A stretch of 63,494 nucleotides of DNA, filler included, from Lenisia limosa (Eukaryota; Protista; Breviatea), in assembly GCA_001655205.1 (NCBI GenBank). It is 12 parts of 12 records of this genome, joined end to end, with 100 filler letters (N's around TTAATTAATTAA, not from the genome) between each part and the next. Parts side by side here need not be neighbours in the genome. Positions count along the whole stretch, not along the records: positions 32,446 to 37,436 come from LPNZ01002749.1; 11 more parts are not named here. The stretch is one strand, 5' to 3'. A program made the translations under genes and the position numbers. Under the pieces are notes generated by a model, which saw only the letters and a list, made by a program, of their open reading frames with translations, ran no database searches and was not told the origin of the DNA. Below, piece by piece: positions 32,478 through 37,536 of the stretch (the stretch's first letter is position 1; every line of letters begins with the position of its first letter).

Positions 32478-33870
32478 TTGTTCTTGGTGACGAGGGGCAG
32501 ATGCAGGAGCTGGTTAAGGACCATGAAGGTGTCCCTTTCAAGGTGCGTAGGGATATATGGGAAAATGACAAATCTGACAAGAGGGTATTTGCTTAAAGTC
32601 ACCCAGGAACTCTTTGATAAATGTAAAACGTGTCCTTTATTTTTCAACCCATTCATACAAACATATTTAGAAACCATTGTTGGGCAGTGGCAATCGTAAT
32701 GTTTTATTTGATATGCCAATTTGGTGAATGCTGTATCCAGAGGAAAGATGACTTTGTCCAGGGCCCCTCAGCCATGTGCTTCGACAAACAGGGAGCGCTG
32801 TATTTCTCCGACGCGGGGCCAATGGGAGAAACCTCCATCGACAACCCTCAGGGTTCTGTATTTACTGTTTCTGCTGAAGGTGTGGGAAGTTTTTGACCAT
32901 TGGATTTGCTGTGTTCTGAATCATTATTGTCTTATGATTAACAGGTCAAATTCTGGTACCCCTTGTTCTTGAAGGCCTAGCGCATCCTTGGGGCGTAGCC
33001 TTGTCCCCGTGTCAGAACTATCTCTATGTAGCCGAAACAATGAAGAACAGAATACTTCGTTTTGTTAGATGGAATGGTGTTTTCCACGGATCTGTGTTCA
33101 AGCAGGTAAGGGTGGAGGGTGATAATTAATCCATTCACTTTTATTGTGCTCCGCCTATTTCAAAATACTATAGCTTCATTTTATTTCCGGTATCGTGATA
33201 GAAGCTGCATATAATATAGCTATACAGTATGTCAAACAAAACTCTCACATTCTGTTTATGTTCTCAGTTTGCTGGGAGAGTAGGGCCGTCAAGTATCTGC
33301 ACCCTGCCCAATGGCGATTTGGCGGTCTGTCATTTTGAACTGGCTGTAGGAGAACGTAGGCAACTTAACTATTTTAATCGTGTATTTAGTGCAAGGGCGT
33401 ATGGTATCAAGTATTACAGATGTCCAATGTTTTTCTTTGTAAAATATCATTGGCATCTTTGCTCTAAATTCCAGAAAATATGTATTATTAGTACAAGTAT
33501 GTGATATATTAGTATATTATCTCTGGTTTTAAAAAAGTAACCAAAGTCAACTTTATCAACATGCCTTGACACTTTAGACATATCAGGTCGTGTTTTGATT
33601 GTGTCTGAGGGAGAGGTGACGAAGGTGTTTGAGACCCCGGCTCCCGAGCTCACTGGTGGGTCTTTTTCTGTAGTGTAGTATCATATATAACGTCAAATTT
33701 GCACAATGCAACAGAAGGAATTATGCGACAAGTTTAAAAACATGTTATTGAATGACTGATTGATCATTTCGCGATGTTTTGACTTTGTAGGTGTTTGCTG
33801 CTCGAGAGACGGAAAAGTCTTATTCCTAACTGAACAGTCAACAAACAGTGTGTACAAAATTACCCTTTAG
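32478..33870 (+). CDS. SMP-30/gluconolactonase/LRE-like beta-propeller protein, C-terminal part
   Basis: ELVKDHEGVPFK|GPSAMCFDKQGALYFSDAGPMGETSIDNPQGSVF|...LAHPWGVALSPCQNYLYVAETMKNRILRF...SVFKQ|FAGRVGPSSI...PELTG|VCCSRDGKVLFLTEQSTNSVYKITL*. Confidence 0.85.
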
Positions 33871-34016
33871 TTTCTTTTATTTAGTTGTGCTGTACAGTAG
33901 GTGTGTATTTTGTATGGTCTGACATGTCTGTGATTGACTGCATTTTAAGTGTCCTAGTTTAATCAAAAAAAGGTTATGGCGGGGTGAATGTGTGCTAACA
34001 TGAGCTCATATTCTTA

Positions 34017-37000
34017 TCATTCACAACAACCTTCCAGTTTTTTGAAAAACCACCCCAAAGATGTCAAAACAAATAAATAGACGACTGTTCTCACAGATGT
34101 GCTGGATATACTAAGAAAAGGGAAACAATATTAAGAAAGCGGGAGGTCAACATTTACACTGCATTCTTGACGGTTTTTGAGATGTTCTTCGCACTTTTTC
34201 GCGCTACTGAAAGGAGACCTGTCATTCCTACAATATTGGATGAAGCAATACTATTTTCATGTGTTTATATATACATGTACAATTACTAGATCTCCATGAT
34301 ACTAGTTTCAATGAACATGCACTCATCCTACCAGTTACGATCGCATTGATGGCATTGAAGGTGCTGCTCTGCTGCTCCTCCTCTTCTTGCTACAAGATCA
34401 GAGAAAACAAACGTATCTCCAAGCCAACTCTATTTCGCCTTGATATTATGTGATATGTTTTTACATTCAAACATAGTATTGTACTCACTCTCCCCCAACC
34501 TCCTCTTCCTCCTTGGCGATTGCCATTGATTGGAGCGCGGACTCCAGTTCGGACATTCTCTCCGCCACATCGGGTTCGGACCATCTGTTAGGTCGGACAA
34601 CCAGAGCATGTACCATCTGAGGTGGTCAATAAAGGATGTCATCAGTCGTGAAGCTCTAGTCATCAGGGCATCTTTTCGGTCCGAAAAAAGACCAGATTTA
34701 CTATTAGATAAAGTGAAATCAAAATGATACAAAAGTAAGCCCACCCCAACCACCCCTTTAATGAGAAACAAAAAAATATTTCTAAAGACACAAAACTAAC
34801 ACCTGTCTTGCATTTATTGTGGTGCTCTTGATTGCCAATTTAAAAACATTCCAAAAAGTGACGCAGGCGGTTGCAGACCTTGATTTCGGGGTCATCCACC
34901 TTCTCCAGGGCAACTCCAACGACGTTTCGGGACCATCCGGGCTAACAGGTTAGAGAGGGGGTTCAATTGTCAAAGGAAGAAAAAACTCTTTATTGACACA
35001 ATAAACAATTTACATCATGATATATTGTAGTATGCTCCACCAACTTTCAATGAATCCTGCGGGCACGCAACAGCCATTCCAGGAATATCAGGAAGTCCAA
35101 CCAGAAGGTCTCCAGGCATTGCAACTCCAATTGTCTGAGAATATTAAAAATAATTCCTTGAGACCTTCAGCCCCACCTTCATAGGCACCTGTCCGACTAG
35201 TGCGAGTCGGACCATTTCCTTCTTCCTCTCGGGGGTGGCGGGAACGTTACCGCAGATCAGGGGTTGTGAGGTGACAACAAGAAGCTGTTCGGAGTCTTGG
35301 GCGCAGAATGTGACCCTGGGGCGTAAGGTCGTGAACAGTGACGGCAAATCAAAATAGAAAGTTCTTACGAAAAATGAGTAGCGAATTCAGATTAATGAAC
35401 CATTGATAAATTTAGATAGCAGGTCTTTTCCCACCTGTAGTGAAACCTTTAAACTATTGACGGGAACGGTAAGTTACTGAAATGCGCGAAGGACTGCGAT
35501 AGCCTTAACCCCCACATACCTTCCGCCAGTCATTCCGACAATTTCTCCAGGGTTGAACGTTTGAGCATGATCAGCTTTCTCGAAGTACTGAATCGTCAAC
35601 CAAATAGAGCACCAAATTATATGTTGTTTTCTAACAATACAATCAGATGAAAGCACATCATTTCCCTTCTGACCTCAGCGAAATCGGCGCAAGGTCCGGA
35701 CATTTGGTTGGTGTTGTATGAACAGGTAACATCAGCTAAGACTCGCAGAATGTAGTTCACCTGTAGGATGAGAATTCCAAAGCATGTACTGGANNNNNNN
35801 NNNNNNNNNNNNNNNNNNNNNNNNNNNNNNNNNNNNNNNNNNNNNNNNNNNNNNNNNNNNNNNTGGAGTGAACCACCATAAGACGATCATCTGCGATATG
35901 AATAAAGACAATGCATCAACAGTCTCTGGTAATTTTGATGATAATAAATAATGTTAAATGTGGCAGCGAGAAAAGATGCTACATCCCCCAGTACCCCCCC
36001 CTCAGCGCGTACCGGGGTTAGACTCAACCATGCCTGGAATTGTGAAAAAAAAACAAAAAAAAAAAACAAAGCGGAGACAAATCTTAACTTTTCATTGGTA
36101 ATGCAAGTATCATCTTGTAGAACTGATTCTATTCCTCTAATATTATCTACTCCCAGCAAACCGTCATTGTCATTGGGTCGTTGACGCTTTTTGACATCCT
36201 CTCTCAGACGGCGAGGACGGACATTCATCTAAACTAGTCAAAAACACTGACATCACATGTTCAAACTTCAATTATCCTTTCTGGACCAGTGTGCATCTCC
36301 CTTATGTAATGAGAGTATCATTTGTTATGGCCATATTGCTTTGGATCACAAGACATCCATGCCTTCAGAACAATAGAATATCCATTACGATCTGCAAACA
36401 GAAGAATCGAATTGGTTCTACACCCCCTTGTGCCTACCCGGGCAGGTGTGATGTTGTAGGAGGGATCAGCCTCGACCTGAACGCAGCAGAACGACTCACG
36501 TGCCTTTGCTGCAATGTTATGTTGGGGTGTGCTAAATGCCATCTCACACCATTAATTCCAACAGTTATATGCATGTGGATAATCTCGTTCAGAATAGTAT
36601 AGCAATAAGAAATAAAAATAAAGAAGTATCTGGCCAAAGCCGTCCACACCATCACGCTTATAAAAGATATTGGATTATAGAATAATATTAATTCACCCAA
36701 TCATTTGCCTTACAACTCTTTGCACACAGCTTTCTGCGTGCCTCCAGAATATACCAACATTATTGATCTGTTCATTATTATCACAGTTGGATCACGAAAA
36801 ACAATGAGAAGAGCACCCTACACTGGGCTTCGCGGGTTTTGAAGGAGTTGAAGATGGTCATGTAGCCATGCTTGAAGTTGAAGGACCAAGACACGGCCAT
36901 ACCCTCGGCATTGGGCTGCATCGTCTTCTCCCTATAACAATCAGCTGTGCTCACAATATTGATGCGGTCATTTAATTTGATACAGAATGATAATAATGAA

Positions 37001-37251
37001 TTGAGTTTTTGAGCAGTTGTTATATATGATAAGGATATGAACATAGCTTTCTTCTTTCACCTTCAGTATAAATATGGATTTAAAACGCAAGATTCATCAC
37101 AAAAAGTGAAGACTTGCTGAAAAATCATAGCTTATCCCCCTTTTCAAAACCGAACCCAGACATACTGGGCCTCTGTGCGACCAAAAATCATGACGTCATT
37201 GGTAATGTCTTTGGAGCTGTCCTCAAAGTAGATTCGGATACGAAGGGGGAT
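34017..37251 (-). CDS. Protein with Peptidase_G2-like (phage-type autocleavage) domain, coiled coil and probable C-terminal TM; 5' partial
   Basis: Phase-consistent exons: SGPCADFAE|YFEKADHAQTFNPGEIVGMTGGR|VTFCAQDSEQLLVVTSQPLICGNVPATPERKKEMVRLALVGQVPMK|TIGVAMPGDLLVGLPDIPGMAVA..|..VVGVALEKVDDPEIK|MVHALVV..ERMSELESALQSM..|..RTVVYLFVLTSLGWFFKKLEGCCE*. Linkage of exons upstream of 35760 is not fully phased. Confidence 0.7.
36598..36754 (+). mobile_element. Family B repeat, near full length
   Basis: TATAGCAATAAGAAATAAAAA..GTATCTGGCCAAAGCCGTCCACACCATCACGCTTATAA..CACCCAATCATTTGCCTTACAACTC..GCACACAGCTTTCTGCGTGCCTCCAG. Confidence 0.88.
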
Positions 37252-37536
37252 CTACAGATCGATGAGCCCAAAACAGACTGTACAGAAGAAATGTACTTCT
37301 AGAAAATTCTAAGACACTATATTATTCCAATATTATCATTATCTACAGATTTGTGATCTATCATATAGTATCATCACATATATACATATTATACTATACC
37401 ATACATCGCAATGGGACATAAAAATAAGGTTGTATCNNNNNNNNNNNNNNNNNNNNNNNNNNNNNNNNNNNNNNNNNNNNTTAATTAATTAANNNNNNNN
37501 NNNNNNNNNNNNNNNNNNNNNNNNNNNNNNNNNNNN

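What the first reader, a model, noticed from the sequence alone, without database searches (positions are those of the whole stretch)
34017..35760. Intron-rich eukaryotic gene with a phage-type Peptidase_G2 autocleavage domain, coiled coil and probable tail anchor
Seen: phase-consistent exons give ADFAEYFE..GEIVGMTGG..VVTSQPLICGNVP..ALVGQVPMK..GDLLVG..PGMAVA..VGVALE, then a heptad/acidic helix (ERMSELESALQSMAIAKEEEE). A 47-nt intron (about 34111-34157) would then add TVVYLFVLTSLGWFFKK. Established: the D-[YF]-A-E motif and GQVP pattern define the glutamic autoprotease/intramolecular chaperone of phi29 gp12 (MEROPS G2), also common in bacterial proteins. MYRF and Dictyostelium MrfA use a different phage chaperone (S74) to cut themselves off a membrane. 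Inference: a parallel, G2-based membrane-tethered self-cleaving protein of bacterial or phage origin.
Basis: partly seen in the sequence, partly recalled or inferred. Interest (0 to 1): 0.78.

Follow-up and report, generated by a model that had tools for sequence, protein, structure and literature searches.

The report
Phage self-cleaving domain in protist gene
A spliced, transcribed gene of a protist (closest relative in the breviate Pygsuia) carries the self-cutting folding domain of phage tail fibres (Peptidase G2 type), so it may cut itself in two as the animal factor MYRF does with a different phage domain; the proposed membrane anchor is not confirmed.

Summary

The G2 call is supported, with one caveat.
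- An HMM of 26 bacterial domains, many of them Pfam PF11962-positive, scores the spliced window protein at 98.8 bits. The best of 2000 shuffles scores 6.6.
- The Asp and Glu of the D-F-A-E motif are invariant in 35 sequences.
- A family profile hits only phi29 gp12 and the Dpo31 chaperone domain in the PDB.
- An AlphaFold model of the Pygsuia orthologue is closest to the gp12 C-terminal fragment.
- Caveat: Pfam's own model scores the orthologue at only 18 bits, below its cut-off of 25.

The tail anchor is not supported. The RNA contig stops 7 nt before the proposed 47-nt intron, no RNA contig covers the proposed last exon, and the extra tail has no counterpart in Pygsuia. Instead, a short hydrophobic helix followed by Arg-Lys, lying in RNA-confirmed exons, is conserved.

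A conserved basic motif resembling a nuclear localisation signal lies upstream. The N-terminal domain remains unidentified. A MYRF-like role is plausible but unproven.

The parts
37166..37251 (-). Upstream exon of the N-terminal domain (IPLRIRIYFED...GRTEA). The mRNA continues 5' beyond the piece.
   Evidence: RNA contig depth covers 37165-37253, with a loose end of over 255 nt at 37253. Collinear with P0003 residues 178-206.
36822..36931 (-). Exon of the N-terminal domain (EKTMQ...SWSFNFKHGYMTIFN...).
   Evidence: RNA contig piece 36822-36930, with no differences from the window. Matches P0003 residues 207-240.
36438..36508 (-). Exon (SKARESFC...ITPAR).
   Evidence: Depth arithmetic on the RNA contig. 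GT and AG flanks. Matches P0003 residues 241-263.
36100..36228 (-). Exon carrying the conserved basic, NLS-like motif VRPRRLREDVKKRQR (36178-36222). The RNA contig seems to hold only 36100-36187.
   Evidence: 82% identity over 17 residues to P0003 264-280. Depth arithmetic. The boundaries are unresolved.
35674..35890 (-). Exon spanning the assembly gap (35795-35863). It encodes the coiled-coil stalk (KLAELDDKVNYILRVL) and ends with the motif C-A-D-F-A-E. The predicted cut lies between Ala (35686-35688) and Asp (35683-35685); the Glu codon is 35674-35676.
   Evidence: The RNA contig joins 35762 to 35864 through 21 nt, in frame. Asp and Glu are invariant in alignment A2.
35520..35587 (-). G2 domain exon (YFEKADHAQTFNPGEIVGMTGG).
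   Evidence: Depth of the RNA contig. HMM alignment.
35177..35315 (-). G2 domain core exon (VVTSQPLICGNVP...ALVGQVPMK).
   Evidence: RNA contig piece 35177-35314. 56% identity to P0003 residues 413-453.
35045..35134 (-). G2 domain exon, preceded by a confirmed 42-nt intron (35135-35176).
   Evidence: Joints 35134/35177 and 34941/35045.
34879..34941 (-). G2 domain exon (PGWSRNVVGVALEKV...).
   Evidence: Joints. HMM alignment.
34500..34616 (-). Exon with the end of the domain and its terminal helix (ERMSELESALQSMAIAKEEEE). The HMM match ends near 34521.
   Evidence: RNA contig piece 34500-34616. It aligns to the C-terminal helix of the bacterial domain, HMM positions up to 194.
34190..34344 (-). 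Conserved short hydrophobic helix followed by Arg-Lys (AIVTGMTGLLSVARKSA), split by intron 34228-34331. This is the candidate membrane-binding element.
   Evidence: Both exons and the joint are in the RNA contig. It matches P0003 AVLAGILGLVSLFRKEA; 6 of 2000 shuffles score as high.
34154..34227 (-). Last confirmed exon, running to TAA at 34154-34156. The RNA contig ends at 34165.
34017..34157 (-). Untested.
   Evidence: GT..AG is in phase. No RNA contig lies on 33950-34164. No match in P0003. Equally long alternative tails exist.

Best explanation
This is a genuine nuclear gene of a protist. Its only detected eukaryotic relative is a 748-residue protein of the breviate Pygsuia biforma (P0003).

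The protein has, in order:
- an N-terminal beta-rich domain of unknown fold;
- a conserved basic motif (RPRRLRED-KKRQR) that looks like a nuclear localisation signal;
- a coiled-coil stalk;
- a compact G2-type intramolecular-chaperone (auto-chaperone) domain of the kind found at the C-terminus of phage tail spikes and Bacteroidota fibre proteins;
- an acidic linker;
- a short conserved hydrophobic helix with a basic tail.

Shown: transcription and splicing; homology of the domain to the G2 family; conservation of the Asp and Glu of the D-[FY]-x-E motif.

Inferred: as in phi29 gp12, the domain trimerises, helps the upstream stalk to fold, and then cuts the chain just before the Asp (here between Ala and Asp of C-A-D-F-A-E). 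The N-terminal part, carrying the NLS-like motif, would then separate from a C-terminal remnant that carries the hydrophobic helix.

Whether that remnant holds the precursor on a membrane is not shown.
For: Transcription and splicing:
- RNA contig with exact GT..AG joints.
- Open frame across all confirmed exons.
- Collinear orthologue P0003 from Pygsuia.

Homology to the G2 family:
- BLASTP of P0003 to bacterial P0005 and P0006: 38% and 31% identity over about 120 residues, E 5e-19 and 4e-18.
- P0006's domain passes Pfam PF11962 (26.2 bits against a cut-off of 25). About half of the listed bacterial relatives (368 found, best 120 listed) carry PF11962.
- HMM of 26 bacterial domains: window protein 98.8 bits, P0003 81.7, phi29 gp12 20.3, best of 2000 shuffles 6.6.
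- D42 and E45 are invariant in 35 sequences.
- The profile of A2 hits only Dpo31 D4 and phi29 gp12 in the PDB (E 3e-6 to 2e-3).
- AF2 model with pLDDT 80.6. The top Foldseek hits are 3gqh and 3suc, both gp12, probability 1.00, TM 0.51-0.56.
- Atlas fold neighbours are Bacteroidota and phage tail proteins.
- P0003's domain hits phrog_34132, as do two phage tail-fibre-like proteins.
- In Dpo31 the cleaved chaperone domain starts at the equivalent Asp (PMC13317679).

C-terminal helix: the hydrophobic helix plus Arg-Lys is conserved.
Against: - Pfam PF11962 is sub-threshold on P0003 (18 bits, E 0.002) and finds nothing on single window exons. The spliced window protein could not be given to Pfam.
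- Foldseek E-values are modest (1.7e-3).
- Cleavage, trimerisation and localisation are untested.
- The hydrophobic helix has only about 13 apolar residues. In P0003 it is followed by a 70-residue basic tail, which is unusual for a tail anchor.
- The N-terminal domain could not be identified. AF2 gave pLDDT 34, and Pfam and PDB profile searches were blank.
- The RNA contig appears to lack the 14 codons that start the NLS-like motif, and one of its exons has odd boundaries.
Confidence: 0.6

Rival explanations
1. It is a MYRF-like membrane-tethered transcription factor built with a different phage chaperone. The precursor sits on a membrane through its C-terminal hydrophobic segment. The G2 domain trimerises and cuts. 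The N-terminal trimer, with its NLS, enters the nucleus and binds DNA.
For: - The domain order parallels MYRF/MrfA (PMC3828593, PMC3742443).
- A conserved basic bipartite motif is present.
- P0003 has no N-terminal signal peptide and a Pro/Gln/Ser-rich N-terminus.
- The C-terminal hydrophobic helix is conserved.
- Language-model neighbours of the N-terminal domain include COE1, LAG1 and SPT23/MGA2 DNA-binding domains, at lead level only (score 0.79-0.84).
Against: - No DNA-binding family is detected by Pfam, by a PDB profile search or by fold.
- The hydrophobic stretch is short.
- The basic tail after the helix in P0003 argues against N-terminus-in-cytosol topology by the positive-inside rule (established knowledge).
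Confidence: 0.25
2. The domain serves only as a folding and trimerisation aid for a soluble coiled-coil protein, as in phage fibres. The cut, if any, merely discards the chaperone. The C-terminal extension is a disordered appendage without an anchoring role.
For: - This is the only role established for G2 domains in phages (Xiang et al. 2009, as cited in PMC13317679).
- All close relatives are fibre proteins.
- The hydrophobic helix is weak as a membrane span.
Against: The eukaryotic proteins add 80-240 residues after the domain, with a conserved helix. The bacterial domains end at the protein C-terminus.
Confidence: 0.3
3. The G2-like domain is catalytically dead in this lineage and acts as a structural trimerisation module without cleavage.
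For: - The motif has drifted: D-F-C-E in P0003.
- The residue before the Asp is Ala, not Ser as in gp12.
- Pfam is sub-threshold.
Against: Asp and Glu are invariant. The bacterial relatives also have Ala or Gly before the Asp.
Confidence: 0.1
4. It is bacterial or phage contamination of the assembly.
For: Nearest relatives of the domain are bacterial and viral.
Against: - Seven GT..AG introns lie in the 3' half (34228-35673), and the gene has more upstream; five are listed as joints in a polyA RNA contig.
- An orthologue exists in the Pygsuia transcriptome.
- The flanking gene is also a spliced eukaryotic gene.
Confidence: 0.01

Closest known systems
Peptidase G2 / auto-chaperone domain of phi29 gp12 (Pfam PF11962; PDB 3GQH, 3SUC) and domain D4 of tail spike Dpo31
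   Same: - D-[FY]-A-E-[YW]-[FL]-E motif with invariant Asp and Glu.
- The G-Q-V-P strand.
- The fold (Foldseek top hits).
- Position directly after a trimeric stalk.
- In the phage proteins, the cut falls just before the Asp.
   Different: - The eukaryotic domain is the short form, lacking the roughly 45-residue insert of gp12.
- It is below Pfam's threshold.
- It sits in the middle of an intron-containing protist protein, followed by an acidic linker and a hydrophobic/basic tail rather than the protein end.
- The passenger is not a beta-helix fibre.
C-terminal domains of Bacteroidota fibre-like proteins (e.g. Lutibacter profundi Lupro_11365, P0006) and IMG/VR phage tail-fibre proteins (L002, L003; phrog_34132)
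   Same: - Closest sequence relatives: 31-38% identity over 120 residues.
- The same short form of the domain, with a terminal helix.
- In a quick tree, the eukaryotic pair groups with four phage sequences (support 80; long branches).
   Different: They are prokaryotic or viral, without introns. Their N-terminal passengers are bactofilin-like beta-helices or tail-fibre repeats.
MYRF (animals) and MrfA (Dictyostelium), membrane-bound transcription factors released by a phage-derived S74 ICA domain
   Same: A eukaryotic protein that has taken up a phage tail-fibre intramolecular chaperone placed between an N-terminal module with a basic nuclear-type motif and a C-terminal hydrophobic segment. 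The proposed logic is the same: trimerise, then self-cleave.
   Different: - The chaperone is G2 type, not S74 (no PF13884 hit).
- No Ndt80-type DNA-binding domain was detected.
- The stalk is a coiled coil, not a triple beta-helix.
- The membrane span is unproven.
- It is not a family member.

Membership tests
Peptidase_G2 (PF11962, MEROPS G2) | Score at or above Pfam's gathering cut-off (25 bits) | tested here: not met
   P0003:340-520 scores 18 bits, E 0.002; it is the top hit but below the cut-off. Single window exons give nothing. The spliced window protein has no reference and could not be submitted. The bacterial intermediate P0006 scores 26.2 bits.
Peptidase_G2 (PF11962, MEROPS G2) | Homology to bona fide members by profile | tested here: met
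   HMM of 26 bacterial domains, many PF11962-positive: window 98.8 bits, P0003 81.7, gp12 20.3, shuffles at most 6.6. The A2 profile hits only gp12 and Dpo31 D4 in the PDB.
Peptidase_G2 (PF11962, MEROPS G2) | Asp and Glu of the D-[FY]-A-E motif at the start of the domain | tested here: met
   The window has C-A-D-F-A-E-Y-F-E. D42 and E45 are invariant in 35 sequences. The motif aligns to S-D-F-A-E-Y-F-E of gp12, residues 691-698.
Peptidase_G2 (PF11962, MEROPS G2) | Fold of the gp12 C-terminal auto-chaperone domain | tested here: met
   This was tested on the orthologue P0003, not on the window protein. AF2 pLDDT 80.6. Foldseek rank 1 is 3gqh_A and rank 2 is 3suc, probability 1.00, TM 0.51/0.56, E 1.7e-3.
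Peptidase_G2 (PF11962, MEROPS G2) | Autocatalytic cleavage before the Asp after trimerisation | not testable with these tools
   Needs expression and mutagenesis.
MYRF/MrfA membrane-bound transcription factors | Peptidase S74 / ICA domain | tested here: not met
   No S74 hit on P0003 at E up to 10. The A2 profile hits no S74 structure.
MYRF/MrfA membrane-bound transcription factors | Ndt80/PhoG-type DNA-binding domain | tested here: inconclusive
   No Pfam hit. The PDB profile search returned only noise. The AF2 model is unusable, pLDDT 34. Atlas leads point to other beta-sandwich DNA-binding domains, all below 0.9.
MYRF/MrfA membrane-bound transcription factors | Transmembrane segment C-terminal to the cleavage domain | tested here: inconclusive
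   A conserved stretch of about 13 apolar residues followed by Arg-Lys. This is too short to call a membrane span.
Tail-anchored proteins | A single hydrophobic span close to the C-terminus in the real mRNA | tested here: inconclusive
   The 15-residue stretch (TVVYLFVLTSLGWFF) needs the 47-nt intron. The RNA contig ends at 34165 and nothing covers the proposed last exon. The stretch has no counterpart in P0003. The ORF length is not unusual.

The most novel reading that the evidence does not exclude
Breviates built a MYRF-like, self-releasing, membrane-held nuclear factor from a second, unrelated class of phage tail-fibre chaperone (G2 instead of S74). That would be an independent, convergent capture of phage self-cleavage for signalling in eukaryotes.
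Probability: 0.25. Interest if true: 0.85.

Novelty: new variant of a known kind. Interest (0 to 1): 0.62.

Why it matters
MYRF/MrfA is the textbook case of a eukaryote reusing a phage tail-spike self-cleaving chaperone. A second case with the other chaperone class (G2) would show that such captures are recurrent. It would also give a compact, sequence-defined self-cleaving trimerisation module that works in a eukaryotic cytoplasm.

No paper in the searchable library mentions Peptidase_G2 at all. Only one eukaryotic relative was found among 1.84 billion cluster representatives, using a 46-residue query. Eukaryotic G2 proteins are therefore essentially undescribed.

Tried and rejected
- Pfam on six single exons: nothing, because they are too short.
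- tblastn of the core exon against phage records: noise only.
- phmmer of the 46-residue exon: three of the four hits (P0001, P0002, P0004) are repetitive proteins and were rejected.
- Word search with P0003 residues 345-505: found only itself.
With P0003:150-510 it found no relatives.
- AF2 of the N-terminal domain with a two-species alignment: failed, pLDDT 34.
- A PDB profile search and two Atlas feature searches did not identify that domain.
- Rfam on the piece: nothing.
- I tried to derive canonical splice sites for the exon at 36100-36228 that fit the RNA contig's length. No GT/GC-AG path of 88 nt exists.
- The spliced window protein was never submitted to Pfam, the big searches or AF2, because it has no reference and I did not type it. 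It was analysed only in scripts.
- The source organism is coded. A breviate such as Lenisia limosa (2016 study, polyA metatranscriptome) is my guess, not verified.

Full report
**What is in the sequence**

One polyA RNA run and one DNA run, both from a single 2016 study, hold the stretch. When laid on the piece, a 1667-nt RNA contig joins the exons at exactly these points: 34227/34332, 34389/34500, 34616/34879, 34941/35045 and 35134/35177. All are GT..AG on the minus strand, and one is a 42-nt intron. The contig's coordinate arithmetic also fits exons 35177-35315, 35520-35587 and 35674-35762.

The N run 35795-35863 is replaced in the RNA by only 21 nt. With these 21 nt the exon reads on in frame to an acceptor at 35890.

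Further exons lie at 36100-36228, 36438-36508, 36822-36931 and 37166-37251. The contig then continues about 575 nt beyond the piece, so the protein has at least about 550 residues.

The plus-strand neighbour (32478-33949) is also spliced in the RNA. Contamination is excluded.

**Relatives**

A full HMMER scan of 1.84 billion representatives with the 46-residue core exon gave one real hit, P0003. It is a complete 748-residue ORF of the Pygsuia biforma transcriptome, a breviate. P0003 is collinear with the window exons from 37251 down to 34903. The window organism is thus probably a breviate or a relative; its name is coded in the tools.

P0003 in turn matches the C-terminal domains of bacterial proteins P0005 and P0006 (Lutibacter profundi). 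Identity is 38% and 31% over about 120 residues, with pairwise E of 5e-19 and 4e-18. That domain has 368 bacterial relatives, mostly Bacteroidota, and about half of the 120 listed are already labelled PF11962. Four IMG/VR phage contigs encode it at the C-terminus of tail-fibre-like proteins.

**Is it Peptidase G2?**

Pfam's own model gives 325 bits on phi29 gp12 and 26.2 bits on P0006, just above the cut-off of 25. On P0003 it gives only 18 bits; that is the top hit but sub-threshold.

I built an HMM from 26 diverse bacterial domains and ran it in a script:

| Target | Score (bits) |
|---|---|
| Spliced window protein (aligned to HMM positions 35-194 of 202) | 98.8 |
| P0003 | 81.7 |
| phi29 gp12 | 20.3 |
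| Best of 2000 shuffles | 6.6 |

- In a 35-sequence alignment the Asp and Glu of D-[FY]-x-E are invariant, as are the G-Q of the G-Q-V-P strand.
- The profile of that alignment finds only five PDB sequences, all of them phi29 gp12 or the Dpo31 chaperone domain D4.
- An AF2 model of P0003:340-520 has pLDDT 80.6, with a long helix followed by a beta domain. Its first two Foldseek hits are the gp12 C-terminal fragment (3gqh) and pre-mature gp12 (3suc).
- Fold neighbours in the ESM Atlas are Bacteroidota and phage tail proteins, and no eukaryotic cluster appears among the listed neighbours.
- P0003's domain also hits phrog_34132.

I conclude that this is a divergent, short-form member of the G2 auto-chaperone superfamily. 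It lacks the insert of gp12.

A quick tree puts the two eukaryotic sequences together (support 99), next to the four phage sequences (support 80). These are long branches, so the donor is open.

**The C-terminus**

The RNA contig ends at 34165, which is 7 nt before the proposed donor and 9 nt before the TAA (34154-34156). No RNA contig lies on 33950-34164. The 47-nt interval has good signals (GTAAAT ... pyrimidine tract ... TAG) and would add 31 residues with a 15-residue apolar stretch. Against that, other GT..AG pairs nearby give tails of 22-35 codons, and the added tail has no match in P0003.

What is conserved is a helix in the RNA-confirmed exons. A-I-V-T-G-M-T-G-L-L-S-V-A-R-K-S-A matches P0003 A-V-L-A-G-I-L-G-L-V-S-L-F-R-K-E-A, and only 6 of 2000 shuffles score as high. 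It has about 13 apolar or small residues and is followed by a basic tail of 15 residues here and 70 in P0003. It could bind or span a membrane, but it is too short to call.

**The N-terminal part**

P0003 has no signal peptide. It has a Pro/Gln/Ser-rich start, a conserved block at about 140-265, and then R-P-R-R-L-R-E-D-L-K-K-R-Q-R. The window carries the same motif at 36178-36222.

Pfam, a PDB profile search and AF2 did not identify the block. Language-model neighbours include DNA-binding beta-sandwich domains (COE1, LAG1, SPT23/MGA2), but at scores that are leads only.

By depth arithmetic the RNA contig holds only 36100-36187 of the exon. That omits the first 14 codons of the motif, and the boundaries are not canonical. 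I could not resolve this without reads.

**Mechanism**

In gp12 and Dpo31 the C-terminal domain trimerises, assists folding of the upstream trimer, and is cut off just before the Asp of the motif. In gp12 this is between Ser691 and Asp692, and Dpo31 D4 starts at Asp664 (PMC13317679; Xiang et al. 2009 from my own knowledge).

By analogy the protist protein should trimerise through its coiled coil and G2 domain and cut between Ala and Asp of C-A-D-F-A-E. That would separate the N-terminal module, with its basic motif, from the G2 domain, acidic linker and hydrophobic/basic tail. Homology and motif conservation are shown. Cleavage, oligomer state, localisation and any DNA binding are inferred.

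**Comparison and novelty**

The logic resembles MYRF/MrfA (PMC3828593, PMC3742443, PMC3742440). The protein is not a member of that family: no S74 domain and no Ndt80 domain were detected.

The open-access library has no paper that mentions Peptidase_G2. I rate this a new variant of a known kind: a second class of phage intramolecular chaperone taken up by a eukaryotic gene. The MYRF-like reading has a probability of about 0.25.

Noticed in passing
window 32478-33949 (+): Convergent neighbour gene with five RNA-confirmed GT..AG introns. It encodes a beta-propeller of the strictosidine-synthase/NHL/SGL kind (best exon: Str_synth E 6e-4, NHL E 2e-3, both sub-threshold). Its mRNA ends at 33949, about 205 nt from the TAA of the G2 gene.
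   Followed up: partly
window 36626-36745: A dispersed repeat of about 120 nt lies inside an intron. In the DNA run, thousands of contigs (3748 records laid on the piece in all) pile up here at 90-99% identity. Summed depth is about 1.7e5, against about 30 for the flanks. It has no Rfam match and also occurs in RNA contigs.
   Followed up: partly
window 35795-35863: The scaffold gap lies inside a coding exon. In the RNA contig it is only 21 nt, so the N run overstates its size.
   Followed up: yes
window 36100-36228 (-): The RNA contig seems to contain only 36100-36187 of this exon. That drops the 14 codons M-N-V-R-P-R-R-L-R-E-D-V-K-K, which are conserved in Pygsuia, and the piece has no canonical donor. 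It may be an alternative acceptor that removes part of the NLS-like motif, or an artefact.
   Followed up: partly
window 35135-35176 (-): A 42-nt intron is confirmed by RNA, so very short introns are used in this genome.
   Followed up: yes
P0006 (Lutibacter profundi Lupro_11365): UniRef names this protein 'Peptidase S74 domain-containing'. Pfam finds no S74 domain in it; its C-terminal domain scores as Peptidase_G2. This is probably a naming carry-over between the two chaperone classes.
   Followed up: partly
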